Positions 30,291 to 63,731 of a stretch of 63,737 nt of DNA are shown in pieces. A program made the translations under genes and the position numbers. Below the pieces are notes generated by a model. That model was not told the origin of the DNA. It worked only from the letters and a program-made list of their open reading frames with translations, and made no database searches. The stretch is from Schmidtea nova (taxonomy: Eukaryota). The first letter of the stretch is position 1. Each line of letters opens with the position of its first letter. Location of the stretch: assembly GCA_044892505.1 (NCBI GenBank), contig CM097883.1, positions 257,734,001 to 257,797,737 on the forward strand. The letters run 5' to 3'.

Positions 30291-31584
30291 CGTGGTGCGG
30301 TCAAAAAGTTTCCGGCCTACCCCAGAAAAAGTAAATGCAAGAAAGCACAACTATATTTTTATCAACACCAATACCATTACTTCTCGAACCAATTACCTCC
30401 GGCATCTACACACTTCTGCCAACGACCAGGGAGGGCTTCGAATGCCCCATACTAAAATGAGGGTGGAAGCTGGTCAAAAATCCGATTTACAGCCTACTCT
30501 AAATCGCCTGCATCCATGAAATACTCTCCCCGCAGTTGATTCTTCAATTCCGTAAATAGGCAGTAATCTGAGGGAGCCAAATCAGGGCTGTATGGAGGGT
30601 GGCTAATGATTTCGAAGCCACAGTCATTGAATTTTGTTTGGGCAATGCGGCTGGTGTGAACTGGCGCATTGTCATGTTGAAACCAGTGAGGGAGACCATA
30701 TGGTTTTCGGCACTTTCTACGAGCTTGCTCAACGAGATTACCGTAATATTCTCCGCTGATTGTCCGTCCCTTCTCAAGAAAGTCGGTGAGGATCACTCCC
30801 TTATGACTCCAAAACACAGTCAACATGAGTTCCCGTCTGTGCGACATTCCGGAACGAGACTTCCAAACTTTTCCTTCTTCCGGCTTTCTCCATTCCATAG
30901 ACTCCCGCTTTGATTCAGGCTGATGTAGGGGTAACGGTGTCTCATCACAAGTGAGAATGTTTTGGATAAATCTTTCTCCATACTTGCGGTAAATGGCGAG
31001 GTTCATGAGACACGCATTCTTTCGGTTATTGCACATCTCAGTTGTCAAAAAGCGAGGCACAAACCGAGACACCACCTTGTTGAAGTTAAGGTCTTTCAAT
31101 AATTGCACTACGGTGCCGTGTGATATTTGTAGGGATTCTTCCAGCTGCCTGGTAGTTATACGGCGATCTTCCAGTACCATTTTCTCCAATTTTTCCTTCA
31201 CATCTTCATTTCTCAAAGTCTTTGGTCGACCCTCTCGTTCCTCATCTGACACACTTTGCCGACCCCGTTTGAATTCAGCAATCCAAAACTTGATGGTAGA
31301 CTGAGAGAGACACTTTTTGCCATAGGCTCGATTCAGATTTACCATGATTTCCTGGTTGGTTTAGCCGAGAAGAACACAAAAGCGAATAGCACTGCGATAC
31401 TCAATTTTTTCCAGCGAACGCACTTGCAATGACATTTCCATCTGCAACAGATAAAGTAAATGGATTAGGTCAATAATATTTTCAACATGAAATTGTCAAT
31501 AAATTTCCAATAAAATAAACCTATTTCCATTAAAAAATCAATTTGTTAAGTAGGGTATGTCGGAAACCTTTTGACCGCACCACG
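30291..31584 (-). mobile_element. mariner (DD34D) transposon, 1294 bp
   Basis: TIRs cgtggtgcggtcaaaa / ttttgaccgcaccacg; TA TSD at 30289-30290 and 31585-31586. Confidence 0.95.
30340..31345 (-). pseudogene. mariner transposase with premature stop at 30494
   Basis: FVPRFLT, TCDET, HDNAPVH, YSPDLAPSDY; C-terminal tail disrupted. Confidence 0.9.
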
Positions 31585-41698: not shown

Positions 41699-42050
41699 TA
41701 GAAATCTTGGATATTATTCGCAACCACAAATTCCAATACGATTTTATATAGAAAATATTTTAATAATTAATATTATTTGAATTATGTTTTTTTAAAAGTG
41801 TAAAAAAAGAAACGGAAATTAGTTAAAAGTAATATGAAAAGATAATTTATTAATAAAAAAAAATAGTTATAAATTAGAAATCTTGGATATTATCGCAACC
41901 ACAAATTCCAATACGATTTTATATAGAAAATATTTTAATAATTATTATTATTTGAATTATGTTTTTTTAAAAGTGTAAAAAAAGAAACGAAAATTAGTTA
42001 AAAGTAATATGAAAAGATAATTTATTAATAAATAAAAATAGTTATAAATT
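41699..42050. repeat. Tandem duplication, 2 x ~176 bp
   Basis: tagaaatcttggatatt...gcaaccacaaattccaatacg at 41699 and 41875. Confidence 0.85.
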
Positions 42051-42703
42051 ATTATTAAATTATATTTTCGCCTCCAATTATTATCATGAATTACCCACTA
42101 ATTTCCACATCTATCAAACATTTCGCCCTCAATATCGGGGAGTTTGTTCCAATCACGGTATTTACATAAATAAAGTTAACAATATCACAATTCCACACAG
42201 CCATTGTGTTATAGATATGTGACCCGCTTCCACATAAAATATTTTAAATAATTAGAAAATTCAATGGTATCACTTAATACTTTTCAAAATAGTTAAAAAG
42301 ACAATTTTTAAGGAAATTTCTTACGTTAAAAGTCAAATCGCATAAACATCGGCATGGACAACAAGGACCTCTAATGGTGCCGACAGGCTCATCTGTTGAA
42401 TCGATAATAGAAACATTTGGTGAACAACAGGAACATCTTTAAATATAATTATAAACCAATTTTTTTTAACTGAGTTACTAATTAAAATAAATAATGAAAG
42501 ATACAATTTTGATCAATTATGAAAATGCAACATTTAATTGCTGTTCAAAATATATTCTTCTAAAGTCGCTCTTAAATAAAAATTTTAAAAATGAAATAAA
42601 AATAATAAAAAAATATAATAATAAAAATAAATAAACAAAGTTATTAAATTGAGAGATAAGTTAAACTAATAATTAATAATTAAATGATTTTCATATTAAT
42701 TCT

Positions 42704-47599: not shown

Positions 47600-49817
47600 T
47601 GAATTGTCAGATCAAAAGAGGTTTAATATTTACATACTTTTATAATTAAAACAAATGTATTTTACAAAACATTATAATAATTTAAATTAATTTAAATTAA
47701 TTTAATTAATACTATTTATATTTAATTACACAAAGTTTGGTATGAAAGTACCAAATTTTAGCTGAATGTGCAATATTACTTATTGCACAATCTTTCAACA
47801 GTGTCTTAATTCTTTTCTCCTGGACCCCCATATTTAATAATAGATTCATTGTCTTAGGTTCGAATGATCCCAAGGAGCGAATTATACAAGTAAAAAATTC
47901 AACTTTAAAGTCTGGTTTAACTGCTTGTATCTCAGATCTTAGATTTTCGTATTTTTCCAAGTTTAGTTTGTCACTCAACTCAACGTTTGAAACAGAATCA
48001 ACTGGACATTTCATGTCTACTAAAAGTATTGTATTCGTTTCAGTATTTGTTATTAAAAAGTCAACGCGTTCAGTCGAATTCGGTGAAAGGGAACATTTGT
48101 GATCGACGACAACGAGTAAATTTGGATTTTTAAGTTCATTTTTGATTTTATCTATACAAGCATTGTGTTTATTTGTAGCTAAAGATTGATTGATTTTACA
48201 TTTTTGTAAAACGTGAAGTATCGTTTCATCCTCAGATTTACACCTACGACACAGATGATTCTCGCCAGTTTTATGTGGTTTGGCAAATGTTGAGAGAGTT
48301 TTGTTCGTGCATGATGAACGAATTTCCATTCGAATTCTGTCAAATCACTCCGGAAAATAAGCTTATTTACAAGAGGACAGAATTTAATCGCAGAGACGAG
48401 AAGATTACTATGATTACTCATTTCCCATTTTTCGAGATATGAAACTTGTATTGCAGAATGCAATATTTTTGACAACGCCTTTCTTAGAGTTGGTTATAAG
48501 ATGCGTGTGCCAGTTAATGTTGTAGTGATACGAATTGAAAGATTTTCTTTGCCAGTTTCAAATAATAGTTTGATGATGTGAACTCTGGCAAAGTAAGCAA
48601 TAGATGTTCTTAATCGGTAAAAGCGAGTTTTACCACCGCTGTGATTTTGTTTACTCTCTTTTCCATTAACCCATTCTAAAGAGTTGGATTTTTAATTTCA
48701 AGTCTTGGACTCGTAACAAACAAGAGTGAAAAGGTATTTATCGTTTTCGAGTATTTGCAAGGTGATTTTAGCAAACGATAAAAGTATACAATCGTCTATG
48801 CAAGCAGATCTATGCAACCAGCTCCACCAGTTTCCGTTGCATTATAAAAATAACTAATTTCATAATAGTTCGGTAAGTTTAAAATCTTTTTTAAATGGCT
48901 TCTCAGTAGACTAGTATTATTAACATTTATTCTTGAATTATTTTGGGGATTAGCAAAAGAACTGGTTTTTATTTCCCTAGTTCTAATTGGAAAAATAAGC
49001 CAAGAATGCAAAAACATTTTATAAGCCTTAAGTTTTTGCCAGCCATGAAGATCAGAATTAGCAATCTTTTTAGTGTCTTCAATGACTTTTCTGACGATTT
49101 CATAGGGACTTTGATGATTATTCTCACCTGTTGGTACACCCAAATATTGGTAAAATTCATTTGTCGTTATCTTTTTTATGTATTCTTTGTTGACATCAAT
49201 TTCACTTACAATTTCAACCTTTGGATATTGAATATATGCGCATTTTTCAGGACGATATTCAAATCCGATTTCATTAGCAGTACTGATAGCAATGTCTATC
49301 AATGTCTGTAAATTAAATGTATTCGTCGCGATAAGAACTATGTCATCTGCATAAGCCAACACTTGTACAGGAGAAGTCCTTATCATAAATGGATTAACAT
49401 TCGACAAGTTTATAGCTTCAAGAACTGGATTGATGGCTATTGAAGAGTATCATTGAGATTGGACAACCTTGCTTGACACCTTTCTTTTTCAGAATGTCTG
49501 GTGTCTGCGTTTTTTAGGCAATAAAATGAGCTTGTGTCTGTGTAAATTAGTTTTAATATCTTTTCACTAAACGTTCATGTGTCTTAAAAGTGTCCACATG
49601 TAGTCCTGTGGAACACTACCGAACGCGTCTTTTATGTCGAGCCAAGCTATAGTCACAGGTAAGGATTTACTATATTTCGATTGTTCGACAATCGCAGAAA
49701 GAATTGAATTATGTTCAATACATCCCTCGAATTCCGAACCACCCTTTTGGCCAACGTGTAATAGTGAGTTATTTCTGATCCACATATTAAGACGATAGTA
49801 GACAGAAGTGTGCACCA
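47600..49817 (-). mobile_element. 5'-truncated non-LTR retrotransposon with restriction-like endonuclease (R2/NeSL-type), defective
   Basis: WLDIKDAFGSVP, KGVKQGCPIS, YADDIVL, CCHC (CRRCKSEDETILHVLQKC), REL (RVDFLI...LVDMK...KY); frameshifts. Confidence 0.88.
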
Positions 49818-51030: not shown

Positions 51031-51803
51031 AAAGCTTTATTAAGAATTTTATTGTCAAATGATTCGAGCAAAATGATTCGAGCAAAATGATTCGATATTA
51101 GAGACAATATAGCGATTTGACCAACATTGTGTGTCGACAGAACTGAAGGCTCATCGTAATGAAATAATAAAGTTTCGAAAATAGAAAGGTCACAATTAAA
51201 GTTATCTAATTTCACAAATTTGGCACAACCATCAGGTTCGGCACCTGGTTTTGCAGACGAGAATCCTTTATATCCTAACTGAAGCATTGCTGGTTCGATG
51301 TCAGATAAGTAATATGAAATTTCAACTTCTTGGAGACAGAAAATGTCACAATTTAAATTCTCCAGATCCTTCTTAATATTTATCCATCGAATTGGCCAGT
51401 CAAGAAATCTCTGATCGCAATTTTCATAAAGAACATAACCATTAACCAAATGACATTGAGCCAAAATATTGAGACTGGAACTCATCATTTGAAAACCAAA
51501 TTTCCCGAACCATAGCATAGAAAACTTCCTTTTAAAACAAATTCTTCCATTCAAAATTTCATATCCAAACTTAAAAGACCGAAATTTCCCGAACAGTTAA
51601 ACTAAATTGCAATATTTAAACAATTCCAAAAATTCTACCTGAAATTCAATTCTCAAATTAATTACAACTCGAACGCGCACACAGACGCGAATAAACACAA
51701 CACCACAGACGGTGAGGGAAAAACGCGCACACAGACGCGATAAGTTATTAACAAACGCACAAAAAACAGCCAAAGTTTGCTCAGGCAAACCTTGGCTGAA
51801 ACA
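51031..51803 (-). repeat. BEL element 3' LTR (contains Angel-like fragment; distal end in gap)
   Basis: Starts TGTTTCAG directly after the polypurine tract; matches 62991-63726. Confidence 0.85.
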
Positions 51804-51817
51804 TTTCCTCCCACCTT
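51804..51817 (-). other. Polypurine tract of BEL element
   Basis: aaggtgggaggaaa immediately before TGT. Confidence 0.75.
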
Positions 51818-51867
51818 GATCTCTTCTAGCGGATCAACCGACCTATTCATCTCTGGGGGGCCAACCT

Positions 51868-53562
51868 TCAATTCCTAACTTTATTTTTCCACTTCGGCTT
51901 ATACTTATATCTGTCACTGAACTTTTCTTCAGCCAATAATCCTCTCATGGTATCCTGGATACACCCCCTCCAACATATGGACATTTTTATTTCCAAATTT
52001 ACTGTTGCCAATTTATCGTTAATATCATTTACATATCTCGTTCCCACTGCTAACATTTCTTCAGTTTCCGCACAATTATTTATTTTTTCTTCTAATCTTT
52101 TAATTTCACTTTTATATTCCAATTCGCCCGTTTTTATTTTACTTTCAAGATTTTCTATCCTTGAATGAAGTTGTGTTACTAAATCCGACTTATCAACAAG
52201 AACTTCATTATCAACAGTTGAACCATGATCAACTTTGTCAAATGATCCAATTTTATCGTCACTAGCTACATCTTTACCTTCTATCGGAAGATAAGCTGAC
52301 TGCTCACTACCTGTTTTCTCTGCCATTATAACTGGACAATTTATTCGTTCAATCGTTTCTACTTTTTCACATTTAAATCTGACATTTTTTATAACTTTTC
52401 CATTATCTTCTAGATTTGTTTCACTTTTATTAACTTTTCCCTCGTCACTTTTATCCACATTGGAATTTTCCACTATTCCTTGCCTAATATTTTCACCATT
52501 AAGGGAATTCTCTCCAATGATTTCCTCAAAATTACAATTTTCTTCAATATCGCTAATATTTTCCACAATTTTCTCATCGACAATGCAGTTTTCTTCAAAA
52601 TTATTCTCATTTACTGCCTGCTCATTTTTTACTGACATTGTAGATTCAATTTTCGTCATTACTTCTTGCACTAAATCGTTTGAAGAAGTATTTATTCCAT
52701 CCTCGTTTGCAATATCAACCGACTCAGAGTTATCAACCATTTTACTAGACACACCACTATTCACTGCGCTATTCTTACCTCGACCTGAAATCAAAACGCC
52801 ATCACTAGTCCGAACCTCCCCAAGAACTACTTCCTGAGCTTTAGGTGCAAAACTCTCGATACATTCCTCTTCACACTGTTCTCTTTGACAAGTCTCCATT
52901 AACAAACTTTTATTCTCGGCTGTCTTTTTACTGTCATCCATTTTACCAAATATGTTATCATTTATTGTGTTATCTTCATTTTGACAAAACCTCATGTTTT
53001 CTGTATGTGTTTCTTCAACTTCCTGGTATCGTTGGAGCTGTTGTTGTGACACTTCATTCGTTGTAAAATATGATTGAATGAAGTGAGTCTGTCCACAGCT
53101 CGGAATGCCTGATCGTTCTTTCCCGATGCAAGTCCATCCCAATGGAGTTAACCTAGCTATCGGTTCTCCTTCACGTCCCCATATCTCTTTAATTGCTTTT
53201 TGTAGACCTGCATAGTCAGCCCCAAGAAGCGCATCTACCGATAATCTACTTCCAGCCGTTGCAAATCTGATTCGTCTCAAATGGTCCCAGTTCTGACTTG
53301 CTTTTTTCCAATCGGTCACTCGCAAATCACTTGTTACCTTCTCTACCGACCAAGCATGAAATTCTTTGACCATCATACCATTTACACTCATTAAGTTCAT
53401 TGTGACTCTCTGCGCCTCCAAATTTTCCCTTTTGCCTCCTATTACTCTAACTGGAACATTAACTTTTGATCCTGATAATTGTAATTCTCTAGACACATAC
53501 ATACTAACATAACTAACCGTACTTGCATCATCTAGTAATGCGTTAACATTATTCTTTTTCCC
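51868..53562 (-). CDS. BEL aspartic protease followed by long acidic low-complexity region in place of RT-RH-IN
   Basis: NVNALLDDASTVSY, ALLGADY, PIARLTPLGWTCIG, then ~400 aa E/N/K-rich sequence; frame is -1 relative to gag. Confidence 0.75.
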   Translation of the reverse strand, partial: GKKNNVNALLDDASTVSYVSMYVSRELQLSGSKVNVPVRVIGGKRENLEAQRVTMNLMSVNGMMVKEFHAWSVEKVTSDLRVTDWKKASQNWDHLRRIRFATAGSRLSVDALLGADYAGLQKAIKEIWGREGEPIARLTPLGWTCIGKERSGIPSCGQTHFIQSYFTTNEVSQQQLQRYQEVEETHTENMRFCQNEDNTINDNIFGKMDDSKKTAENKSLLMETCQREQCEEECIESFAPKAQEVVLGEVRTSDGVLISGRGKNSAVNSGVSSKMVDNSESVDIANEDGINTSSNDLVQEVMTKIESTMSVKNEQAVNENNFEENCIVDEKIVENISDIEENCNFEEIIGENSLNGENIRQGIVENSNVDKSDEGKVNKSETNLEDNGKVIKNVRFKCEKVETIERINCPVIMAEKTGSEQSAYLPIEGKDVASDDKIGSFDKVDHGSTVDNEVLVDKSDLVTQLHSRIENLESKIKTGELEYKSEIKRLEEKINNCAETEEMLAVGTRYVNDINDKLATVNLEIKMSICWRGCIQDTMRGLLAEEKFSDRYKYKPKWKNKVRN

Positions 53563-53760
53563 TTCGATTCTAAAATGATAGGTATCGTCCTGAGGCTTAT
53601 GTAACCCATATCATTTGACTTTCTATTTGTAACCATTCTAGTAACATGTGTTTGGGGTTTTTGATTGCTGTCCTCTTCTGATTCCTTTTCTCTTCGACTA
53701 TGCAACAAACTATGATGTTTTCCCTTACAGTCTTTTTCCTTACAAAATCCTGGTCTGGTG
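53532..53760 (-). pseudogene. BEL Gag C-terminal remainder (third zinc knuckle)
   Basis: TRPGFCKEKDCKGKHHSLLH continues [14 protein letters not shown] across the Gypsy insertion. Confidence 0.85.
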
Positions 53761-54483
53761 TGTGGTGATTCATGCATAGGCATCTGACCACACAGGTTGT
53801 ATGTGTCCAATTGACATTTTGTGGTCGCCTATATTTTGTAATTTTTGTAAAAACTTTCAATTAATTTTTATGTTTGTTGATATTAATATTAATATTAATA
53901 TTGGTGTTGATATTAATATTGATTGTTATTGGTGTTAAGATTAATTTTAATTGTTGTATGAATATGAATATTAATATTAATATTAATTGTTATGAATATT
54001 AATTTTTTGTAGAAAAAGAAAAACTTTGGCGTATTTATAAATAAACATTTACAGTGTTAAAATTGTTTTAATTTCAAATTAAATATTATTTCCAAGTTGC
54101 AAATATTACCTGATTTCAAAAGAATATCACATTTAGAATAATGAATATAGAAAGTAGCAATGAAAAATATTATCCCATAGCTGTTCTAATTGAAGAACTT
54201 AGAAATGATGATGTTCAGTTGCGATTAAATAGCATAAAACGCCTAACAACTATATCATTAGCACTGGGTGCTGAGCGAACTCGATCTGAATTAATTCCGT
54301 TTCTAACAGAAACTATATACGATGAAGATGAAGTCTTGCTAGCTCTTGCAGAACAATTAGCCAATTTCATATCTTATGTTGGTGGACCAGAATACGTTTA
54401 TACCTTGTTACCACCTCTAGAAAATTTAGCAATCGTAGAAGAATCAATTCAAAAGCAGCGGATCCCGGACGTCGTAACCCACA
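53761..54483 (+). repeat. Gypsy 5' LTR
   Basis: Matches 59632-60354 except G54381/A60252; overlapping TATAAA (54036) and AATAAA (54040). Confidence 0.95.
54141..54443 (+). other. Captured intronless fragment of PP2A 65-kDa scaffold subunit A (first HEAT repeats); second copy at 60012-60314
   Basis: [25 protein letters not shown]...[29 protein letters not shown]...GGPEY...[13 protein letters not shown] closely matches PPP2R1A residues ~1-101. Confidence 0.95.
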
Positions 54484-56096
54484 AAATGGTGTCAGAAGTG
54501 GCAGAAGGTATTCTTGTTTCTACGTCTCTAAATGCGCGAGACGAAGTCGTGCGACAGTCCGGACCACTGGAGACTCATACTCCTACCACTGCGGACGTCT
54601 GGGCCAGATTTGTTGATGTCCAGCATGTTTCTCTCGTGGCAAACTACGATCTCCTCACTATCCGAGAACTTTACTTTCAAGGTAACCACATTATGTTAAA
54701 TATTGTTCACCTTTTCAATTTGTGTGGTCTAGGCTTTTTGTGTGTTGTCGCCACATTAACACCCTTACCTGTTCCCTTATCCGGGGGGTCTAACCTCAAT
54801 ATACATAAAGTACCTTGCACTGACATAATGGCAAATGATCAGGGCCATGCCGCCCTACGTGCTTCTGAGGGTTTTGTTTTTGTCTCAACATCAGACAAGA
54901 ACCGGATACTTCCCTTTAGTTTAAGCCTATCCTTTAAAGGACTTCTCAGTTACCTAAAATATGAGAAAAATGTTTACATAAATGACACGTATGCTACATA
55001 CAGGGGTTTTGTACATAGATTCGACGATCGACCCTTATATGAGCATATAAATGCTGGCGACACTATATATTTGCGGTACCGTATGCGCGGGGGCGCAGAC
55101 AGCGACAATTCGTCTGTTTCAGACCAACCGCCTTCGCCTGGGACTACACAGCCAGACATCCCAACATCAATGCACAATTTGCCCAAGATTCCGTTCTTTT
55201 TGGATCAGAACGGATCTCCAGCATCCTGGTTTTTTGTACTGGAAAGACATTTTAGGATCAGGACAATCATATCATCCTCCGAAATGTTCGACCACTTGAT
55301 CACCTGTTTGCAAACGGAACTACTTTCGAAATTGGCTCATAATTTCTTGACCATTTCTACTTCTGCTGACCCGTACACAGCTCTTAAGAATCTAGTCCTC
55401 GAGAATTATCGCGAACCTAAGGCCGATATTTTCTCGCATTACTTCAAGGCACAGTCTCTCGGGTTACAACGTCCATCCGAATTCCTCAAAAGAGCCATTG
55501 ATAACCTCGAATCCTTACAACAAGGTATCACTACCGACGACTCTCTGCTTCGTAGATTTTTTTTGTCGGCTTTGCCACCTCAGACACAGGCAATATTGGC
55601 AGTTACGGAGTCAACCAACCTCCGGGATCTCGCCAATATGGCAGATAAAATCGCCGAAGCATCGGGCGTTAGCACTTCGCAACAGTGCAACCAAGTCAAT
55701 TCGTTTGAGACTTTAGCCGCTGATACAGCCAGTTCAGCAAAGCGAAACATCCAGAGTTCAGATATCGTTTTGGCTGCAATTGAGCAGATATCTGATCGAT
55801 TGAAGAAAATTGAGGCTCGGGATGAAAGACGGTCATCTCCGCACAGACGCACCTTTTCTCGTGAACGTTCTTTTCCCCGTTCTAAGAAGATTTGCTACTA
55901 TCACGAAAGATTCGATAGAAAAGCTCAAAAATGCCACATAGGTTGCGAATATGCAGACAGGAGTTCAAGCTGTGAGCTTTTAGATGTCTGCGTCTATCAT
56001 GGGAGATACAGGCAAGCAGCCAAATACTGTTTAGAAGGCTGCAGGTATTTCAAAAGTAATCCAGCACCGCAGAACAAGTCACATCCAAAAAACTAG
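54141..56096 (+). CDS. Chimeric ORF1: PP2A scaffold A N-terminal fragment, linker, ubiquitin-like domain (RMRGG), CsRn1-type Gag with two CHCC motifs
   Basis: 651-aa uninterrupted ORF from an LTR-internal ATG; Gag with [18 protein letters not shown] and [18 protein letters not shown]. Confidence 0.88.
54487..54501 (+). other. Primer-binding site complementary to tRNA-Leu 3' end
   Basis: TGGTGTCAGAAGTGG is the complement of CCACTTCTGACACCA, 3 nt after the LTR end. Confidence 0.85.
54870..55094 (+). other. Divergent ubiquitin-like domain immediately before Gag
   Basis: 75 aa, FVFVST...YRG...[24 protein letters not shown] follows the ubiquitin pattern IFVKT...FAG...[25 protein letters not shown]. 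Confidence 0.68.
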
Positions 56097-56135
56097 TCTC
56101 GCCATCTCTGTACGCGGCATGCACAGATGGCAATC
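56087..56135 (+). promoter_or_regulatory. Programmed -1 ribosomal frameshift signal (gag to pol)
   Basis: A AAA AAC (56087-56093) just before the gag stop, 7-nt spacer, hairpin gccatct...agatggc; -1 frame open into FLVDTGS. Confidence 0.85.
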
Positions 56136-59100
56136 TCTTTTCTTCTTCCCTTTCTTTTTCATTTTTTGTTTCCGCCCAAATTATTTCACCTCTCTGTACA
56201 GACATAGCACGCAACACCATACAATTTCTAGTAGACACCGGATCTAGCATCTCTCTTTTGCCCAAGTCATTGTACAGACCATGCCAACCGGGCAAATTAC
56301 ATTTGAGAACTGCCAATGGCAACCAGATGTACACTTCTGGTACATGCAACATCACACTCCGTCTGCTTGATCAAATAGTCAATTGGACTTTTCACATTGC
56401 GGAAGTCACACACCCGATATTAGGTATTGACTTCTTACAAGCGTACAGCATTACGTTAAATTGTGAGCAACACAGTTTATCATTCTCCAAGCCGATTTCA
56501 GCTTCTTCCAATGAACTTAAAACGAGTCCCAAACCTTCTTCCTGCAACGCAAAAGCCTTTGCGGTCGACAGCATTCATAATGATTTTGTTAAGAATCTCA
56601 GTTCACACAACATTTTTTCGGACATTGTGGGACCAATCAAAAGAGAAGTCAGCTCGAACTTCTGTCACGAAATTACAACTTCCGACTCGCACCCTCTCAG
56701 AGAGAGAGTTCGTCCAATCTCGGAAGACAAATATAACTTTCTCAAGACTGAGTATGAATCTCTTTTGGCTAGTGGCATTATCCAACGATCCTCCTCACCT
56801 TGGGCCTCACCCATTCACTTCGTGACCAAAAAGGATGGATCTTATCGGATATGTGGCGATTACCGCCGCCTTAACAACATAACGCAGCACGACTCTTATC
56901 CGATGCCACTCATTAATGAATCTCTGACGCGTTTCTCTAACTGCAAGATTTTCTCTACATTTGACCTAGTCAAAGCTTATCATCAAATCCCTGTTGCTCC
57001 ACGGGATGTACCAAAAACAGCCGTCATCACTCCAATCGGTCTGTTCGAGTTCTTGCGAATGCCTTTCGGCTTGCGTAATGCAGCACAAACCTTCCAAAGG
57101 CACATCGATCACATCTTGTCAGATTTAAATTTTGTCGTCGCGTACGTGGACGACATATTAATCGGTTCCCCCGATGTTGAGACTCACAAGGCACATCTAC
57201 GTAAGCTCGTAGCTACATTAAACAAAAATCAATTAAGAGTTAATTTGTCTAAATGTAAATTTTTTCAACATCAAGTTGATTTTCTTGGACACACACTATC
57301 TGCAGACGGAATAGCTCCACAATCAGCTCGTTTAGAATCCATCAGGAACTTCTCTAAGCCTGAAACTGTAACGCAGCTTCGCAGTTTTTTAGGTGTTGTC
57401 AATTATTGTCATCGATTCATACCAAATGTTTCGAATGTTCTCGCTCCATTGACATCACTCAGCTCAGGACCGAAACGTTCCATCGTAAAATGGACAGATA
57501 AATCCAATGCTGCGTTTGGAGAAGCAAAAAGAGCACTCGAGTCAATTCAGACTTTAGCTTACCCAAGGCATTCCCTTCCGTACAGCCTAACGACAGATGC
57601 ATCCGATGTTGCAGTCGGAGCTGTCCTAACTCAGTCACAAGACGGAATAGTTCGACCTCTCGAATTCTTTTCGAAAAAGCTAACCGAAACACAGACTAGA
57701 TATTCAGCTTTTGATCGCGAGCTCTTAGCCATCTTTCTTTCGGTTAAGCACTTCAAACATCTGCTGGAAGGAAAATCCACCACGGTTTATACTGATCACA
57801 AGCCGTTGGTTCACATAACTACAATGAAAGATCCTTCTCCAAGGCAATTACATCAAATCTCCTTTATCACAGAGTTCACCAGTGATATCAGACATATAGC
57901 TGGAAAGGATAACATCATAGCTGATTTTCTGTCTCGCAGTACAAACGCAATTTCGTTAGGACCTTTATTCACTACTTCCACTCTACGAGATAACAAACCA
58001 ACAGAAGCCGATCTTCGGTATTTTCTACACAATAAATCAAATATCGACGGAATCGATTTTGACTCCTCACTCTCAGGTGTACTTAGACCAATTCTTGGAA
58101 CTGAGCTTCGTCGACCCGCATTTCATGCAGTTCATAACTTACACCATCCTGGAACAACAGCCACTTATCAGCTGCTAAGAAACCAGGTCGTTTGGCCTTC
58201 TATGAGGCGAGATGTGAAACTGTGGGTTAGCGAATGTCTAAAATGTCAATGCAATAAAGTAACCCGACACATCAAACCACCGATCACGCACTTTCCAACC
58301 GGTAACCGGTTCGATGTCGTTCACATCGATCTTGTTGGTCCTTTGCCGATAGACAACGGTTTTTCATATCTTCTAACCATGATTGATAGGAAGACAAGAT
58401 GGTTTGAAGTCGTTCCTCTACGATCCATATCAGCAAATATTGTTGCAGAAACTTTTATATCAGAATGGGTCGCACGTTATGGCATTCCAAGACACATAAT
58501 TAGCGATCGAGGAGCCCAATTCGAATCGCAACTCTTCACTTCTTTAACAGAACAGCTTGGCATTAAACGGCTGCGTTCTACAGCTTATCATCCACAGACG
58601 AACGGTCTCATTGAAAGGTTTCACCGGACACTCAAGCACTCGCTCCGAATACTCTCTTTAAATCATCGTTGGACGAAAGCCTTGCCTTTCGTTTTATTGG
58701 GTTGGAGGAACACACCTTCTAAGACGACTGAGTCATCCCCAGCTCAATTACTCTTCGGTACCAACACTACGGTACCTAACGAACTAATTGACTTAGGAAA
58801 TGAAACAACACTCGAAGAACTTGGCACCGCCAGACGCCATTTCCTGGATATTGATAGCAATCCTATATTTTCGTCTGCCAACGCACACAAACCTTTTATA
58901 CCAAAATCTCTATCTTCAGCCAAGTTCGTTTGGATCCGCACAATCTCGGACTCAGCGTTGAAGCCTAGGTATACTGGACCTTATCGCCTACTAGGCATAA
59001 TCGGAAATTACGCCACTGTCAAGATGAACGATTCATCTGAGACAATCGCTCTGGCACGAATCAAACCAGCTTTTGGATTATCGGAATTCTTAGACTATAA

Positions 59101-59506
59101 CGCCAAAGAATTCATTCCAACCCCTACAGATAATTCCTTCCAATCTGATGACACCTCTCCAAGTACCAGTCTTCCACGATCTCAGCCGGACTTGGATAGT
59201 AAAATTCATTCGCCAACAACTCCTACTGAGGACACTACGTTATACCATTCCGATTTCTCTCCTACAAACCTGGACCAAGCACCTTCGCACTCTGATGGTA
59301 CTCACATTACCGTTAGACCCGAAACAAGCTCTTCACCTGCTTGTAGCGAGTTGCCAACTCCAGTTCCAATTTTGAAGAAATTGACACAAGTTCAACTTCC
59401 ATCAGGATCTACTAGGAAGCGCCGTGTTTCCATCAACCCGTGGGTGCGCGAACGTCGTATTGGGGACAATCCCAATGCTCCCACCAGACTCCACCGCATT
59501 TTTTGA
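56093..59506 (+). CDS. Gypsy Pol (protease-RT-RNase H-integrase), intact
   Basis: FLVDTGS, YVDD, FDRELLA, HHCC finger, HIDLVG / SDRG / ERFH, YTGPY; no stops. Confidence 0.95.
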
Positions 59507-59620
59507 AACGCATCCTCTCAACATTCCATCATTTTCTTTCTTCCTTCTTTTTCTTTTTCTTCTTTTTTCTTTGCCGCCAACACATTCTTTTCACCACACA
59601 CTACTGCTCCGCAGCTTTCG

Positions 59621-59631
59621 TAGGGGGCTAA
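59621..59631 (+). other. Short polypurine tract of Gypsy element
   Basis: tagggggctaa directly before the 3' LTR TG. Confidence 0.65.
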
Positions 59632-60354
59632 TGTGGTGATTCATGCATAGGCATCTGACCACACAGGTTGTATGTGTCCAATTGACATTTTGTGGTCGCC
59701 TATATTTTGTAATTTTTGTAAAAACTTTCAATTAATTTTTATGTTTGTTGATATTAATATTAATATTAATATTGGTGTTGATATTAATATTGATTGTTAT
59801 TGGTGTTAAGATTAATTTTAATTGTTGTATGAATATGAATATTAATATTAATATTAATTGTTATGAATATTAATTTTTTGTAGAAAAAGAAAAACTTTGG
59901 CGTATTTATAAATAAACATTTACAGTGTTAAAATTGTTTTAATTTCAAATTAAATATTATTTCCAAGTTGCAAATATTACCTGATTTCAAAAGAATATCA
60001 CATTTAGAATAATGAATATAGAAAGTAGCAATGAAAAATATTATCCCATAGCTGTTCTAATTGAAGAACTTAGAAATGATGATGTTCAGTTGCGATTAAA
60101 TAGCATAAAACGCCTAACAACTATATCATTAGCACTGGGTGCTGAGCGAACTCGATCTGAATTAATTCCGTTTCTAACAGAAACTATATACGATGAAGAT
60201 GAAGTCTTGCTAGCTCTTGCAGAACAATTAGCCAATTTCATATCTTATGTTAGTGGACCAGAATACGTTTATACCTTGTTACCACCTCTAGAAAATTTAG
60301 CAATCGTAGAAGAATCAATTCAAAAGCAGCGGATCCCGGACGTCGTAACCCACA
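59632..60354 (+). repeat. Gypsy 3' LTR (contains PP2A-A fragment)
   Basis: 723 bp, offset 5871 from the 5' LTR. Confidence 0.95.
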
Positions 60355-63300
60355 TGGTGCATTCTCTCACTCCATGTCCTTTCCTTAAGCAGTTATAACA
60401 TAATCTCCACTCTTGAACTAACTTTTTTCTGTCATTTACTGGCAATTGTTTGAATTGTGAGCATTGATCTAGATAATGTGCACCCGGACATTGGAAACAC
60501 ATCGACCTGCTTTGACCTTGTTGCATGATTATTCCTTCCCCACCTTTACTCGAGTTTTGTTTTACTTCATTGCCCGAGTTCGTAAAGTGTGAGTACCGTC
60601 TATTGTCATTCTTTTCGGAAGCCTTGAAGTTCTTCTGCCCATACTGCCAATTAGAGTCTTTTTCACGCCAAAATCCATATAATATCTCATTTGTCGATCG
60701 CGTAAGATCAGCTTCGTTTTGCAACCTCTCTTTTAACCGGGTTATTGATTCTTCCCCTTCATCTTTCGCTTGCTCTCTTTTCCATCGAATAAGTAGCGAA
60801 GCTGGCAATTTCTTTAACAATTGTTGCAAGAGACAGCCTCTCTGTAAGTCCTCTTCCCTTCCGATTGCTTTAAACCGTACCTCCATTGACTCCAACAATC
60901 CAACGAGAATATCCAAGTCTTTCATCTCTACTTCGCGAACCGGTCGAAATTTCTCTACGGTCTCTAACATAGTCAGATAACTACGTTCTTCACCTCCGTA
61001 ACGCCTTTCTAATTTCTCTTTCGCCATCTTGTAGCCATCGGCGGTATAACCCAGTGGCTCTATCATTCTCAGCGGCTCATCTAGCAAGTACTGCCTAAGA
61101 TGCAGCATTTTATCTTCGGCTGTTCCATCTGCCGTATCTATTACCGTATTGAAGGCCGCTTTCCACGTCTCAAACTCGACAACCTTCCCATCGAAAATCG
61201 GAATCTTTATTTTCTGCAACCGATTTAAACTCTTCTTTTCTCTTGGCGCTTCATATTCCGATGTCTTTGACCCCTCGCTCACAACACTTTGTTCTGTTCT
61301 TTTTTGCATTATCTTATCTATCTCTTCTTTTTTTGTTTCCAGCTCACAGATATCTTTTTCCACTAATTCTAACTCCTCCTTCTTGTTTAATTTGTCACAC
61401 AGCTCGACAAGTCTTAACCAATCTTCCAATGTATCCTCAAACTCTTTTTCATATAATACAAGTGTGTCCTTTATTTCCCCGACCATTTCTGCCAACAATA
61501 AGTTACGCGCTCGAGTTACTTTCCATTTTTTAGATCGCCGACGGGTCCATAAACTTTTGAACTCTTCCTCATCATTACCACCTCTTAAACGAAGAACAAG
61601 ATGAAGAGTAGATTCCTTTTGTATGTTGTAATCTGCCAAGATTCTTCCGCCTTCCAATTGTTTACCCGCAAATATCAATCTCTGTTGATCAGGTGGGATT
61701 CCCTCTTTATCTTGTATTCTCGTTTTTACCTTTTCTATTGTGTCACTTGATTCAACTTCCAGGGTAATGGTTTTCCCTGTTAACGTTCTTACAAATATTT
61801 GCAATCCCCCTTCCATTCTCAAAACTAGACCGCGAGTTGATTCCTTGGTGGGAATAGTCGTATTTCGATTAATTAACTTACTGAAAACGCCGCCCAGAGT
61901 TTCAACACCCAACGAAAGCGGTGTAACATCTAGCAATAATACCTCAATCACATACTCAGCAAGAACTCCTCCCTGTATTGCTGCACCCATTGCAACAGCT
62001 TCATCTGAATTCACACTCTTGCTAGGGGCTCTACCAAAATGTTTCTGCACAGTTTCTTGAACTTTAGGCATTCTTGTCATCCCACCAACTAACAACACTT
62101 CTTTAATATCCGATGTTTTTACCTTTGCATCTTTAATAGCCTTTTCACAAGATTCAATTGTTCTCTTAATTAGGTGCTCCACTAATTGTTCTAACTTTGA
62201 CCGTGTGAACCTTAAACTCAAATGTTTAGGTCCCGTATTATCCATTGTCAAATATGGAAGATTAATGTCCGTTTGAATAACCGATGACAATTCAATTTTA
62301 GCTTTTTCAGCTGCTTCTCTAACTCTCTGTAAAGCCATAGGGTCTTTATCAACATCAACGCCTTGATCACATTTAAATTCATAAAGAATATTTTGTAAGT
62401 GCACATTATCAAAATCTTCCCCACCCAAAAACGTATCCCCACTTGTAGATTTTACTTCAAAACTATTATTCAGATTTTTTATATAACTATCTAGCTTTAG
62501 CTTAATGATTTCCCAGTTGAAACACCCATAATTGATTTTAAATCCATAATTTTTAACCTCTCGCCCTATCTCTCTAATCATCGCTGTATTATAAATTATT
62601 TCTTTTGGAACACACTCCTTATTCACACAAGTCCCACCCATTTTATTTTTTCCAATTAAAGGAACAGATTTCCTATATTCATCTGCTCTCCTGGCTCGTT
62701 CATCCCCCAATTGAAAAGAATGCTGGGGCCCATAGCAGCATCTTTTCCGGTCCCTTAATGGACTCAACTCACCGCAAAACTTGTCAAAGGGCAGAGGGGA
62801 AAATGTTTCAACACAGGATAAAAATTTACAATTCATAAAATAATGTTCAAAGATATTACAAAAATACAGATTAAGAAAAGGTACCTTGTTCTGGCTGGAT
62901 AGCCAGAACAGTATTGCCCATGTTCCGAGAAGTACGTGGTCCCCCGATGGGAACCACGCTCTGCTACCAAAAATGATTCCATCAAAACGCAAAGCTTTAT
63001 TAAGAATTTTATTGTCAAATGATTCGAGCAAAATGATTCGAGCAAAATGATTCGATATTAGAGACAATATAGCGATTTGACCAACATTGTGTGTCGACAG
63101 AACTGAAGGCTCATCGTAATGAAATAATAAAGTTTCGAAAATAGAAAGGTCACAATTAAAGTTATCTAATTTCACAAATTTGGCACAACCATCAGGTTCG
63201 GCACCTGGTTTTGCAGACGAGAATCCTTTATATCCTAACTGAAGCATCGCTGGTTCGATGTCAGATAAGTAATATGAAATTTCAACTTCTTGGAGACAGA

Positions 63301-63556
63301 AAATGTCACAATTTAAATTCTCCAGATCCTTCTTAATATTTATCCATCGAATTGGCCAGTCAAGAAATCTCTGATCGCAATTTTCATAAAGAACATAACC
63401 ATTAACCAAATGACATTGAGCCAAAATATTGAGACTGGAACTCATCATTTGAAAACCAAATTTCCCGAACCATAGCATAGAAAACTTCCTTTTAAAACAA
63501 ATTCTTCCCTTCAAAATTTCATATCCAAACTTAAAAGACCGAAATTTCCCGAACAA
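60320..63556 (-). CDS. Chimeric polyprotein: Angel-like, glutathione reductase, mitochondrial-type HSP70 and ubiquitin fragments fused to BEL/Pao Gag; truncated by the Gypsy insertion
   Basis: 1078-codon uninterrupted frame; first in-frame ATG at 63478; domain motifs listed in the sub-features. Confidence 0.9.
60360..61576 (-). other. BEL/Pao Gag
   Basis: [21 protein letters not shown]...KMLHLRQYL...KEKLERRYG; [13 protein letters not shown] and [14 protein letters not shown]. Confidence 0.9.
61577..61804 (-). other. Captured ubiquitin unit, 76 aa, intact LRLRGG
   Basis: [18 protein letters not shown]...[14 protein letters not shown]; nine differences from canonical animal ubiquitin by eye. 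Confidence 0.97.
61844..62461 (-). other. Captured intronless fragment of mitochondrial/DnaK-type HSP70
   Basis: [80 protein letters not shown]. Confidence 0.95.
62462..62710 (-). other. Captured fragment of glutathione reductase (redox-active disulfide region)
   Basis: ARRADEY...[21 protein letters not shown]...YGF...FNWEIIK.K.DSYI..LN aligns with GSR GGTCVNVGCVPKKVMWNTA...FNWRVIKEKRDAYV. Confidence 0.88.
62952..62969 (-). other. Primer-binding site resembling initiator tRNA-Met 3' end
   Basis: TGGTAGCAGAGCGTGGTT is the complement of AACCACGCTCTGCTACCA, 4 nt after LTR-terminal CA (62974). Confidence 0.8.
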
Positions 63557-63731
63557 TTAAACTAAATTGCAATATTTAAACAATTCCAAAAATTCTACCT
63601 GAAATTCAATTCTCAAATCAATTACAACTCGAACGCGCACACAGACGCGAATAAACACAACACCACAGACGGTGAGGGAAAAACGCGCATACAGACGCGA
63701 TAAGTTATTAACAAACGCACAAAAAATGACA
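62974..63731 (-). repeat. BEL element 5' LTR (start tentative, near window edge)
   Basis: Direct repeat of 51031-51776; ends ...GGAATCA before the PBS; possible start TGTCA at 63731. Confidence 0.82.
63059..63454 (-). other. Captured fragment of an Angel/CCR4-nocturnin family (EEP) gene; second copy at ~51099-51494
   Basis: LNILAQ...LYENC....LDW..RW..I...L....CDIFCLQEV...LGY...PDGCA...NVGQIAIL most resembles the ANGEL N-terminal half of the EEP domain. Confidence 0.85.

What the first reader, a model, noticed from the sequence alone, without database searches (positions are those of the whole stretch)
53761..54501. PP2A scaffold subunit fragment built into both LTRs of an intact Gypsy
Seen: ~100 codons of a highly conserved PP2A-A N-terminus with ATG (54141) occupy the distal half of both 723-bp LTRs; no ATG lies between the TATAAA/AATAAA (54036-54045) and it. 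Inference: it lies in R/U5, provides the first AUG of the genomic RNA and is copied with every transposition. A cleaved HEAT-repeat product might act as a PP2A decoy, as some viral proteins target this scaffold; that role is speculation.
Basis: partly seen in the sequence, partly recalled or inferred. Interest (0 to 1): 0.88.

Follow-up and report, generated by a model that had tools for sequence, protein, structure and literature searches.

The report
Host gene pieces heading retrotransposon Gag
A young, intact Gypsy-type jumping gene carries the first 103 codons of the host's PP2A scaffold gene inside both of its terminal repeats. The piece appears to be one interchangeable host-derived "leader" that is translated ahead of a ubiquitin-like cleavage module and the element's own Gag protein, rather than a dedicated PP2A decoy.

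Summary
Two 723-bp LTRs (53761-54483 and 59632-60354, one mismatch, 5-bp target duplication) flank an unbroken Gypsy element. Each LTR holds a PP2A-A N-terminal fragment of 103 codons (E 3e-52 to solved PP2A-A).

New here:
- The PP2A ATG opens a 651-codon frame. It runs through the LTR end and the primer-binding site, then an eIF4A-like scrap, then a ubiquitin-like domain ending RMRGG, and straight into Gag.
- In metagenomic relatives the ubiquitin(-like)-GG plus Gag unit is conserved. The leaders upstream are unrelated to each other (histone H2A, 5'-nucleotidase, CNOT1, cohesin SA, RING).
- In six elements (the window's and five relatives) the ORF starts inside the LTR, upstream of the primer-binding site. 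One relative has an H2A fragment, with its ATG, inside its LTR.
- The BEL-like element that hosts this Gypsy has the same layout: nuclease, glutathione reductase and mitochondrial Hsp70 pieces, then ubiquitin, then Gag.

Best reading: host mRNA pieces are captured into the transcribed LTR part. They are tolerated because host deubiquitinases would cut Gag free after GG.

The start site, the cleavage and any PP2A-related function are inferred, not shown. The decoy idea has no support. The host organism is unknown, and no second PP2A-bearing copy was found.

The parts
53761..60354 (+). Whole inner Gypsy-type LTR retrotransposon (6594 bp). No breaks were counted in gag or pol.
53756..53760 (.). 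Target-site duplication TGGTG, left copy. The right copy is at 60355-60359.
   Evidence: read
53761..54483 (+). 5' LTR, 723 bp, TG...CA ends
54036..54045 (+). TATAAA overlapping the only AATAAA of the LTR, at the end of an AT-rich minisatellite-like U3 part (GC 0.23). This is the presumed promoter and poly(A) signal.
   Evidence: Relatives have an equivalent AT-rich block 25-105 nt before their ORF start.
54141..54449 (+). PP2A-A (PR65) N-terminal fragment, 103 codons, with ATG. It covers HEAT repeats 1-2 and part of 3. GC3 is 0.18, host-like, against 0.39-0.45 in the element's own genes.
54450..54483 (+). Terminal 34 nt of the LTR (element-derived end, ...CCCACA), translated in frame
   Evidence: similar ...CCCACA or ...CACA ends in L001, L032 and L034
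54487..54501 (+). Primer-binding site TGGTGTCAGAAGTGG, translated as part of the ORF. It contains an in-frame ATG at 54486.
   Evidence: the exact 15-mer is shared with L001, L002, L003, L032 and L033
54534..54677 (+). Degenerate eIF4A-like fragment (C-terminal helicase domain), codons 132-179 of ORF1
   Evidence: E 3.5e-5; 19 eIF4A chains below 1e-3
54867..55094 (+). Ubiquitin-like domain ending RMRGG (codons 243-318). The GG lies immediately before the conserved Gag.
   Evidence: profile against ubiquitin E about 1e-9, ending at the C-terminal GG; hhalign 95.7%; beta-beta-alpha-beta-beta topology at low confidence
55095..56096 (+). Gag proper (Pfam DUF7041 at codons 359-427; Cys/His-rich C-terminus)
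54141..56096 (+). ORF1 as a whole, 651 codons: leader, then Ubl, then Gag. There are no stops in frame, against 24-25 in each other frame over the leader.
56060..59506 (+). pol frame (protease DTG, RT, RNase H, integrase), overlapping gag by 37 nt in another frame
59620..59631 (+). Polypurine-tract region (..AGGGGGCTAA) directly before the 3' LTR
   Evidence: the same motif precedes the LTR start in L001, L003 and L034
59632..60354 (+). 3' LTR. It holds the second PP2A-A copy at 60012-60320, which runs into flanking DNA as a 128-codon ORF. The single LTR mismatch changes codon 81 (Gly in the 5' copy, Ser in the 3' copy).
51031..63726 (-). Outer BEL/Pao-like element in which the Gypsy is nested. 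One nested insertion interrupts it. Its repeats are 51031-51766 and 62991-63726 (5 mismatches). The left repeat abuts an assembly gap, so the true LTR length is unknown.
60360..63478 (-). Outer element's mosaic ORF, from its first ATG (inside its LTR) to the nested insertion. In order: Angel/CCR4-type nuclease piece 63065-63463, glutathione-reductase piece 62468-62698, mitochondrial Hsp70 piece 61835-62464, near-canonical ubiquitin ending RLRGG 61571-61798, and DUF1759 Gag 60767-61195.

Best explanation
What it is. The PP2A-A piece is a recently captured 5' portion of a host PP2A-A mRNA (start codon plus 103 codons). It sits in the transcribed part (R/U5) of the LTR of an intact, very young Gypsy-type retrotransposon.

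Lineage layout. This element belongs to a lineage whose gag ORF does not start after the primer-binding site. It starts inside the LTR and is read through the LTR end and the primer-binding site.

The product. The translated product has three parts. First comes a variable leader, here PP2A-A 1-103, an LTR/PBS-encoded linker, an eIF4A-like scrap and about 60 residues of unknown origin. Second comes a ubiquitin-like domain ending in Arg-Gly-Gly. Third comes Gag.

Inferred mechanism.
(a) Reverse transcriptase switched templates onto co-packaged host mRNA while copying the 5' end of the element RNA. The piece therefore landed in the LTR and is copied into both LTRs at each cycle.
(b) Transcription starts between the TATA block (54036) and 54141, so the PP2A ATG is the first AUG.
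(c) Host ubiquitin C-terminal hydrolases cut after GG, as they do for natural ubiquitin fusions. This frees Gag with a fixed N-terminus (Ala319) and releases a 318-residue leader-Ubl product.
(d) Because the ubiquitin module insulates Gag from whatever lies upstream, leaders are free to be swapped. The only demand is that the frame stays open.

On this reading the PP2A fragment is mainly a passenger that supplies a start codon. It is not a PP2A-directed factor.
For: Shown:
- Anatomy of the element, PP2A homology and in-frame continuity.
- Host-like third-position GC of the PP2A piece: 0.18, against 0.39-0.45 in Ubl, gag and pol. This points to recent capture from the AT-rich host.
- Ubl identity. 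A profile of 7 family members hits ubiquitin at E about 1e-9, with the alignment ending exactly at ubiquitin's C-terminal GG. hhalign against the neighbour's real ubiquitin gives 95.7%. The two Gly and one Tyr are the only invariant columns of the domain.
- More distant relatives have Pfam ubiquitin above the curated cut-off directly before the same DUF7041 Gag: P0135 81.5 bits, P0167 80 bits, P0264 51.6 bits.
- Leaders are non-homologous (alignment A1) and carry different host pieces: 5'-nucleotidase; H2A, CNOT1 plus Rrp44, cohesin SA, RING.
- The ATG lies 28 to 1100 nt upstream of the shared primer-binding site in the window, L001, L003, L032, L033, L034 and L035.
- L034 repeats the pattern independently. 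Its H2A fragment, with the ORF's ATG, lies between the LTR start (PPT plus TGTGGTG) and the PBS-like site.
- In all seven elements the leader frame has 0 stops, against 7-48 in the other frames.
- The unrelated BEL-like neighbour has the same order: host mosaic, ubiquitin ending RLRGG, Gag, with its first ATG inside its LTR.

From the literature and general knowledge:
- Capture of mRNA pieces by LTR elements through microsimilarity-dependent template switching is documented in animals (PMC5131818).
- Cotranslational cleavage of linear ubiquitin fusions by host hydrolases is general knowledge. The natural fusions appear among the hits.
Against: - There are no RNA or protein data. The start site, the poly(A) site and the cleavage are all inferred.
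- For this one element, being in frame is weak evidence. A freshly captured coding piece is open by origin, and it has about a one-in-three chance of joining in frame. The argument rests on the relatives.
- The window's own Ubl is the most diverged of the set. It has no Pfam hit and ends RMRGG, so recognition by a hydrolase is uncertain.
- Only one copy of the PP2A-bearing element was seen. Selection on the fragment could therefore not be measured.
- The fragment's roughly 15 departures from highly conserved PP2A-A columns are mostly conservative. That fits recent capture from a divergent host gene, but it would also fit purifying selection on the fragment.
- The host gene is not available, so the mRNA origin and the junctions are unproven.
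- An 8-nt repeat flanking the block is matched by 5.9% of shuffles.
Confidence: 0.6

Rival explanations
1. PP2A decoy. The released HEAT-repeat fragment binds PP2A regulatory subunits or other partners and perturbs host PP2A to the element's benefit.
For: - The fragment is well preserved: no stops, mostly conservative changes, E 3e-52.
- It would be released as part of a discrete leader-Ubl product if GG cleavage occurs.
- It is general knowledge that some viral proteins target this scaffold.
Against: - It covers only about 2.6 of 15 HEAT repeats (residues 7-108 of 589). From general knowledge of solved holoenzymes, the regulatory and catalytic subunits need many more repeats.
- Relatives carry unrelated host pieces or none at the same position.
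- The low GC3 fits a recent arrival that has not been shaped by the element.
- No second PP2A-bearing element was found.
Confidence: 0.08
2. RNA-level role. Pieces of abundant housekeeping mRNAs at the 5' end of the genomic RNA could make the transcript look like 'self' to small-RNA surveillance, or make silencing costly to the host. Alternatively they could simply donate an efficient 5' UTR and start context. In either case the protein they encode is irrelevant.
For: - Most of the identifiable captured pieces come from housekeeping genes: PP2A-A, eIF4A, mitochondrial Hsp70, ubiquitin, glutathione reductase, H2A, CNOT1.
- They sit at the 5' end.
- In two cases the host's own start codon is used.
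Against: - Abundant mRNAs are also the ones most likely to be co-packaged and captured by chance.
- Older pieces (the eIF4A-like scrap, and leaders with no detectable homology) have drifted beyond nucleotide-level resemblance to any host gene, yet their frames stay open. That points to a translational constraint, not an RNA-identity one.
- No small-RNA data exist here.
Confidence: 0.12
3. The ubiquitin(-like) domain is not a cleavage site. It is a permanent N-terminal Gag domain, for example to engage ubiquitin receptors, sorting machinery or the proteasome, and the leader stays attached to Gag.
For: - Ubiquitin-like domains serve as stable interaction modules in many proteins.
- The window's Ubl is diverged.
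- One relative has KIYGG in place of R-x-R/K-GG.
Against: - The C-terminal Gly-Gly is invariant and is among the only three invariant columns of the domain. It always abuts the start of conserved Gag.
- The neighbour and several relatives keep near-canonical ubiquitin with RLRGG.
- Leaders of up to about 870 residues of unrelated sequence are hard to reconcile with capsid assembly if they stay attached.
Confidence: 0.12
4. The PP2A block is untranslated. Transcription starts downstream of 54141, or translation starts at the ATG embedded in the primer-binding site (54486) or later. The in-frame join would then be a coincidence of a very recent insertion into U3.
For: - The PBS-embedded ATG is conserved in the family. 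It opens its own short ORF in L002 and lies in frame in L003.
- The chance of an in-frame join is about one in three.
Against: - The only TATA/AATAAA block is upstream of 54141, and no ATG intervenes.
- Six relatives have stop-free ORFs that begin 28-1100 nt upstream of the PBS, each a short distance after an equivalent AT-rich block.
- An insertion of about 330 nt into U3 just after the TATA box would be expected to displace the start site.
Confidence: 0.1

Closest known systems
LTR-mediated retroposition / gene-fragment capture by LTR retrotransposons (Tan et al. 2016, PMC5131818; reviewed in PMC6431247)
   Same: Intronless host coding fragments are joined to LTR-element sequence, sometimes several genes in one chimera. 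They are often co-transcribed and in frame. Template switching by reverse transcriptase is the accepted route.
   Different: In those cases the captured piece usually replaces internal element sequence and the chimera is a dead end. Here the element stays complete. The piece lies inside the LTR itself, so it is duplicated at both ends and heritable by the element. It is translated as the N-terminus of the Gag precursor.
Host ubiquitin insertions in cytopathogenic pestivirus genomes (PMC2850149; PMC13517609)
   Same: Host mRNA fragments that include ubiquitin or a ubiquitin-like protein are recombined in frame immediately upstream of a viral protein. Cellular ubiquitin hydrolases then create that protein's N-terminus. 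Extra host pieces may ride upstream of the ubiquitin.
   Different: That is an RNA virus and an RNA-RNA recombination event that arises sporadically in single animals and is not maintained. Here the module is an inherited feature of whole retrotransposon lineages and stands before Gag.
2A 'ribosome-skipping' peptides in the N-terminal region of non-LTR retrotransposon ORFs (PMC3708506)
   Same: A short cotranslational separator near the N-terminus of a retroelement protein detaches whatever is encoded upstream.
   Different: The mechanism differs (ribosome skipping rather than hydrolase cleavage), the element class differs, and no host-gene mosaics were described upstream.
Natural ubiquitin fusion genes (polyubiquitin; ubiquitin-ribosomal protein L40 and S27a)
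   Same: Ubiquitin ending in GG is fused head-to-tail to a downstream protein and removed cotranslationally. These are the named top hits of the family profile.
   Different: In cellular genes ubiquitin is the very N-terminus. Here it is preceded by 112-870 residues of unrelated leader, and in the window's element it is strongly diverged.
Gag-onc fusion proteins of acutely transforming retroviruses (general knowledge)
   Same: A host coding sequence is transduced by a retroelement and expressed as a fusion with Gag.
   Different: There the host part follows Gag and replaces viral genes, giving a defective genome. Here the host part precedes Gag, lies in the LTR, and the element keeps all of its genes.
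Yeast Ty1, whose GAG ORF begins in the 5' LTR upstream of the primer-binding site (general knowledge, not tested here)
   Same: It is a precedent for a gag ORF that initiates within the LTR's transcribed part and reads through the primer-binding site.
   Different: Ty1 belongs to a different superfamily (Copia) and has no host-derived leader and no ubiquitin module.

Membership tests
Ty3/Gypsy (Metaviridae-type) LTR retrotransposon | Two direct LTRs with TG...CA ends and a short target-site duplication | tested here: met
   723-bp LTRs with 1 mismatch and a 5-bp TGGTG duplication
Ty3/Gypsy (Metaviridae-type) LTR retrotransposon | Primer-binding site after the 5' LTR and a polypurine tract before the 3' LTR | tested here: met
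   A TGG-initiated 15-mer lies 3 nt after the LTR and is shared exactly with 5 related loci. AGGGGGCTAA lies before the 3' LTR and is shared with 3 loci. The priming tRNA could not be identified, because no tRNA gene was found in the window or loci.
Ty3/Gypsy (Metaviridae-type) LTR retrotransposon | gag followed by pol in the order protease, RT, RNase H, integrase | tested here: met
   Pfam RVT_1, RT_RNaseH, Integrase_H2C2 and rve in that order. A DTG motif lies upstream of RT. The gag/pol frames overlap by 37 nt.
PP2A scaffold subunit A (PR65) | N-terminal sequence homology to PR65 | tested here: met
   E 3.3e-52, residues 7-108 of the 589-residue chain
PP2A scaffold subunit A (PR65) | Full solenoid of 15 HEAT repeats, including the C-terminal repeats that hold the catalytic subunit | tested here: not met
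   Homology stops at codon 103. This is a fragment, not a member capable of scaffolding.
Ubiquitin family (beta-grasp with C-terminal Gly-Gly) | Significant sequence match to ubiquitin over the whole domain | tested here: met
   The family profile A2 against solved ubiquitins gives E about 1e-9, and hhalign gives 95.7%. The window's own copy alone gives no Pfam hit, but relatives pass the Pfam cut-off.
Ubiquitin family (beta-grasp with C-terminal Gly-Gly) | C-terminal R-x-R/K-G-G tail at the junction with the next protein | tested here: met
   RMRGG in the window; RLRGG, RIKGG and KIYGG in relatives. GG is invariant.
Ubiquitin family (beta-grasp with C-terminal Gly-Gly) | Beta-grasp fold | tested here: inconclusive
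   The AlphaFold2 model shows beta-beta-alpha-beta-beta at residues 243-317, but pLDDT is only 56-72 and the whole-model mean is 49.6. No fold search was run on it.
Ubiquitin-fusion processing (cleavage after GG by host hydrolases) | Actual cleavage at the GG-Gag junction | not testable with these tools
   This needs protein data (N-termini of native Gag).
LTR-mediated capture of host mRNA (template switching) | Intronless copy of a host gene that has introns, with microsimilarity at the junctions | tested here: inconclusive
   The fragment is uninterrupted over 103 codons, while some environmental PP2A-A genes are split there. The host's own gene is not available. An 8-nt repeat flanks the block, but it is matched by 5.9% of shuffles.
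BEL/Pao LTR retrotransposon (the outer neighbour) | DUF1759-type Gag plus a BEL-type protease/RT/integrase pol | tested here: not met
   A DUF1759 Gag and distant BEL/Pao Gag relatives were found. No protease, RT or integrase was detected in either piece. It is BEL-like by Gag only and possibly non-autonomous.

The most novel reading that the evidence does not exclude
The ubiquitin-GG module may be a general adaptor that lets whole lineages of LTR retrotransposons, in at least two superfamilies, keep sampling host mRNA 5' fragments into their LTRs. The sampled housekeeping-gene leaders would be adaptive. They could work at the RNA level, marking the genomic RNA as 'self' for small-RNA surveillance or making silencing costly. 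Or they could work as released leader-ubiquitin proteins that interfere with host complexes such as PP2A.
Probability: 0.12. Interest if true: 0.9.

Novelty: new variant of a known kind. Interest (0 to 1): 0.68.

Why it matters
- It shows a route by which a mobile element can pick up host coding sequence without losing autonomy. The piece goes into the LTR, so the element itself copies it to both ends, and a ubiquitin cleavage module shields Gag from it.
- If the cleavage is real, this is a retrotransposon counterpart of the ubiquitin insertions known from pestiviruses and of the 2A separators of non-LTR elements. It would be a standing source of novel chimeric proteins (exon shuffling) in the host lineage.
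- I found no description of ubiquitin-Gag fusions or of LTR-borne host leaders in seven full-text searches. The literature outside that library was not searched.
- For genome annotation it is a warning. Well-conserved 'N-terminal exons' of housekeeping genes in such genomes can be LTR cargo.

Tried and rejected
- An exact look-up of ORF1 in public assemblies found nothing.
- The single-protein scan of metagenome contigs returned only genuine PP2A-A genes.
- The protein search with the PP2A part returned only true PP2A-A at up to 78% identity. The host's own gene is therefore not on hand, and a synonymous/nonsynonymous comparison could not be made.
- The Gag of the outer element found only distant insect BEL/Pao proteins, so the host organism stays unidentified. 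All relatives come from unnamed ENA, JGI or Logan assemblies.
- Rfam and ARAGORN found no RNA genes, so the priming tRNA is untested.
- The AlphaFold2 model of ORF1 was too poor (mean pLDDT 49.6) to use for a fold search.
- The 8-nt repeat flanking the PP2A block is not significant.
- The idea that the PP2A block is the host gene's real first exon was rejected. The block occurs twice inside identical LTRs with a target-site duplication, and it sits within another element's ORF.
- A GT-type splice-donor-like site in the leader was noticed, but no tool predicts introns here.
Full report
**1.

The window has two identical-length direct repeats of 723 bp, at 53761-54483 and 59632-60354. They differ at one base. 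They begin TG and end CA. They are flanked on both sides by TGGTG (53756-53760 and 60355-60359).

Between the repeats lie a 651-codon ORF (54141-56096) and a second frame. The second frame is open from 56060 and carries a DTG protease motif, RT, RNase H, the integrase zinc domain and the integrase core, in Gypsy order. The two frames overlap by 37 nt, which is the usual frameshift layout. I counted no stops, frameshifts or insertions in gag or pol.

A TGG-initiated 15-mer lies 3 nt after the 5' LTR, and a purine-rich AGGGGGCTAA lies directly before the 3' LTR. These complete the anatomy.

The first 103 codons of the ORF are a PP2A scaffold (PR65/A) N-terminus.
- Match to solved human PP2A-A: E 3.3e-52, residues 7-108 of 589.
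- Identity to PP2A-A of many animals: 73-78%.
- Homology stops at codon 103, which is 34 nt before the LTR end.
- The same block is in the 3' LTR at 60012-60320.
- TATAAA (54036) overlaps the only AATAAA of the LTR (54040), and no ATG lies between them and 54141.

**2.

The PP2A ATG is in frame with Gag. ORF1 runs in this order:
- PP2A-A codons 1-103;
- the last 34 nt of the LTR;
- the primer-binding site, which is itself translated and holds an in-frame ATG;
- a degenerate eIF4A-like stretch at codons 132-179 (E 3.5e-5, 19 eIF4A chains);
- about 60 codons with no match;
- a domain at codons 243-318 that ends RMRGG;
- Gag (Pfam DUF7041 at codons 359-427).

Over the leader there are no stops in this frame, against 24-25 in each of the other two.

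**3. The RMRGG domain is a ubiquitin homologue placed as a separator**

Seven relatives of the Gag part were found in unnamed metagenome-type assemblies. In six of them, the conserved Gag is preceded by an alignable domain of about 75 residues ending RLRGG, RIKGG or KIYGG.
- A profile of the window's domain and these six hits solved ubiquitins at E about 1e-9. The alignment ends exactly at ubiquitin's C-terminal Gly-Gly.
- hhalign against the genuine ubiquitin of the neighbouring element gives 95.7% probability.
- The two glycines and one tyrosine are the only invariant columns.
- A profile search of 1.84 billion representatives found 8378 relatives of the Gag. Roughly 30 of the best 150 include the ubiquitin part.
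- In several of these, Pfam ubiquitin scores above its curated cut-off directly before DUF7041. Examples are P0135 at 81.5 bits, P0167 at 80 and P0264 at 51.6.
- The window's own copy is the most diverged and has no Pfam hit by itself.
- An AlphaFold2 model shows the beta-beta-alpha-beta-beta order, but only at low confidence. I did not use it further.

**4. The leader is the variable part of the family**

Upstream of the ubiquitin(-like) domain the relatives do not align with each other.
- One relative, P0121, has a Ubl-Gag ORF that starts at the Ubl. In that copy a separate short ORF starts at the ATG embedded in the primer-binding site, and pol is absent.
- Other relatives have leaders of 112 to about 870 residues.
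- Where the leader is recognisable it comes from a different host gene each time. These are 5'-nucleotidase (P0123), histone H2A (P0133), the CNOT1 CAF1-binding domain plus an Rrp44 cold-shock domain (P0169), cohesin SCC3/SA HEAT repeats (P0147) and a RING finger (P0188).

PP2A-A is therefore one cargo among many.

**5. Starting the ORF inside the LTR is a family trait**

The exact 15-nt primer-binding site of the window occurs in five related loci, and 13/15 versions occur in two more. The called ATG lies upstream of that site by the following distances.

| Element | ATG to primer-binding site (nt) |
|---|---|
| L003 | 28 |
| L001 | 152 |
| L032 | 204 |
| L033 | 210 |
| window | 346 |
| L034 | 688 |
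| L035 | 1100 |

- The primer-binding site is read in all three frames in different elements.
- In every one of these seven elements the frame from the ATG to the end of the leader or Ub(l) region has no stops. The other frames have 7-48.
- In L032 and L034 the LTR start (polypurine tract followed by TGT...) and the LTR end (...CACA before the primer-binding site) bracket the ATG.
- L034 is an independent replicate of the finding. Its histone H2A fragment begins at the ORF's own ATG and lies at 987-1331. That is inside an LTR of about 1 kb, after an AT-rich block with several AATAAA/ATTAAA motifs.
- In each element the ATG follows such an AT-rich block by 25-105 nt. This is the comparative argument that transcription starts between that block and the ATG.

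**6. The neighbour does the same thing**

The Gypsy is nested, with its target duplication, in a second element on the minus strand. That element's repeats are 51031-51766 and 62991-63726. They differ at 5 positions, so the element is older than its guest. The left repeat abuts an assembly gap, which I left as it is.

From an ATG at 63478 inside its LTR, its ORF reads:
- an Angel/CCR4-type nuclease piece (E 2.7e-17);
- a glutathione-reductase piece (E 1.6e-14);
- residues about 217-424 of mitochondrial Hsp70 (E 5e-95);
- a near-canonical ubiquitin ending RLRGG;
- a DUF1759 (BEL/Pao-type) Gag.

A TGG-initiated candidate primer-binding site follows the presumed LTR end. I compared the two pieces of this element separately and did not join them. 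No RT or integrase was found in either piece.

**7. Age and origin of the PP2A piece**

Third-position GC is 0.18 in the PP2A block. It is 0.39-0.45 in the Ubl, gag and pol, and 0.47 in the eIF4A-like scrap. The clearly host-like pieces of the neighbour are also low, at 0.26-0.29, against 0.43 in its Gag. The surrounding genome is 20-35% GC. The block therefore still has host composition, which points to a recent capture. The near-identity of the LTRs points the same way.

The block departs from columns that are at least 90% conserved among 120 PP2A-A proteins at about 15 sites within residues 8-103, and most of these changes are conservative. Without the host's own gene I cannot say whether these changes predate or postdate the capture.

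The one LTR mismatch changes codon 81. The 5' copy keeps the PP2A-typical glycine.

The block is uninterrupted, whereas some environmental PP2A-A genes have introns in this region. That fits an mRNA origin but does not prove it.

**8. Mechanism: what is shown and what is inferred**

Shown:
- the anatomy;
- the homologies;
- the family-wide pattern of variable leader, ubiquitin-GG and Gag;
- the open frames.

Inferred:
- (a) Capture by reverse-transcriptase template switching onto co-packaged mRNA while the 5' end of the element RNA is copied. The general route is documented by PMC5131818. It would explain why 5' portions with native start codons end up in the LTR.
- (b) A start site between 54046 and 54140.
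- (c) Cleavage after GG by host ubiquitin hydrolases, as for polyubiquitin and the ubiquitin-ribosomal protein fusions that head the hit list.
- (d) That this cleavage is what makes the leaders freely exchangeable.

I put 0.6 on the chain as a whole. The structural statements are close to certain.

**9. The decoy idea**

Nothing found here supports it.
- The fragment covers 2.6 of 15 HEAT repeats.
- Relatives carry unrelated cargo, or none.
- The block looks newly arrived.

The idea is not excluded. If cleavage occurs, a 318-residue leader-Ubl product would be released. Its fate is unknown.

**10. Comparison with what is known**

The closest systems are:
- LTR-mediated retroposition and gene capture (PMC5131818, PMC6431247);
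- host ubiquitin insertions before NS3 in cytopathogenic pestiviruses (PMC2850149, PMC13517609; cited as a concept only, no such sequence was fetched);
- 2A separators at the N-terminus of non-LTR retrotransposon ORFs (PMC3708506);
- cellular ubiquitin fusion genes;
- Gag-onc fusions;
- from general knowledge, Ty1, whose GAG starts in the LTR.

The new elements here are the combination and the place: host 5' fragments inside the LTR of autonomous elements, translated ahead of a ubiquitin separator, recurring across a lineage and in a second superfamily. Seven full-text searches found no description of ubiquitin-Gag retrotransposons. That is absence in one library, not proof of novelty.

**11. 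Limits**

- The source organism is unknown. By its element families and best protein matches it is an AT-rich, probably metazoan, genome.
- No second PP2A-bearing copy could be looked for in it.

These were a human PP2A-A N-terminus, ubiquitin's C-terminal tail, the 3' end of a tRNA and a histone H2A start.

None of those letters was entered into a tool or a script, or used as evidence. Every comparison reported here comes from tool output. The guess about which tRNA primes the element is therefore left out as untested.

Noticed in passing
window 51031-63726 (-): The outer BEL-like element is itself remarkable. Pieces of three host genes (an Angel/CCR4-type nuclease, glutathione reductase, mitochondrial Hsp70) are fused in one frame to a near-canonical ubiquitin ending RLRGG and then a DUF1759 Gag. 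The first ATG lies inside the LTR. No protease, RT or integrase was detected, so it may be non-autonomous.
   Followed up: partly
window 51871-53502 (-): This 544-codon ORF in the 3' piece of the outer element has no Pfam or solved-structure match at all.
   Followed up: partly
window 54486-54501; L001 1044, L002 369, L003 142 and 5218, L032 2759, L033 352: An identical 15-nt primer-binding site is shared by elements whose Gag proteins are only 34-46% identical. It is translated in all three frames in different elements, and it contains an ATG that opens a short ORF of its own in L002.
   Followed up: partly
L003 1-10324: Two complete copies of a related element lie in tandem (period 5076 bp, 99.3% identical). 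Only about 270 nt separate the pol stop from the next gag ATG. This is either a tandem LTR-internal-LTR array or an assembler's collapse of LTRs. L032 and L034 show the same pol-LTR-gag order.
   Followed up: no
L001 496-1040 versus 6082-6591: The two LTRs of this related copy are 89.5% identical over their first 300 nt or so but barely alignable in the distal, coding part. The cause could be a recombinant element or a chimeric metagenome assembly.
   Followed up: no
window 28751-29248 (-); L002 7389-7832: TBP-like ORFs appear both in the window and next to a related element in L002. L002 also has faint Pox_A32 and weak Adeno_PX matches. L001 carries a DNA_pol_B_2 gene with a faint Endonuclease_7 match. 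These look like Polinton- or virus-like neighbours in the same kind of host.
   Followed up: no
window 23971-24645 (+), 30497-31345 (-), 48799-49407 (-): Other mobile-element remnants are present: a weak GIY-YIG ORF, a mariner/Tc1-type transposase ORF and a reverse-transcriptase fragment. The window is a transposon-rich region with no evident host gene.
   Followed up: no
window 25259-27066 and 41718-42067: There are tandem repeats of 754 bp (three copies) and 175 bp (two copies).
   Followed up: no
window 54115-54122 and 54448-54455: The 8-nt word TTCAAAAG flanks the PP2A block on both sides. It may be a template-switch microhomology, but 5.9% of shuffles give a match at least as long. A similar TCAAAAG directly precedes the ATG in L032.
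   Followed up: yes
window 54680-54690: A splice-donor-like AG|GTAAC lies in the leader just after the eIF4A-like scrap. No intron prediction tool was available and no splice model was built.
   Followed up: no
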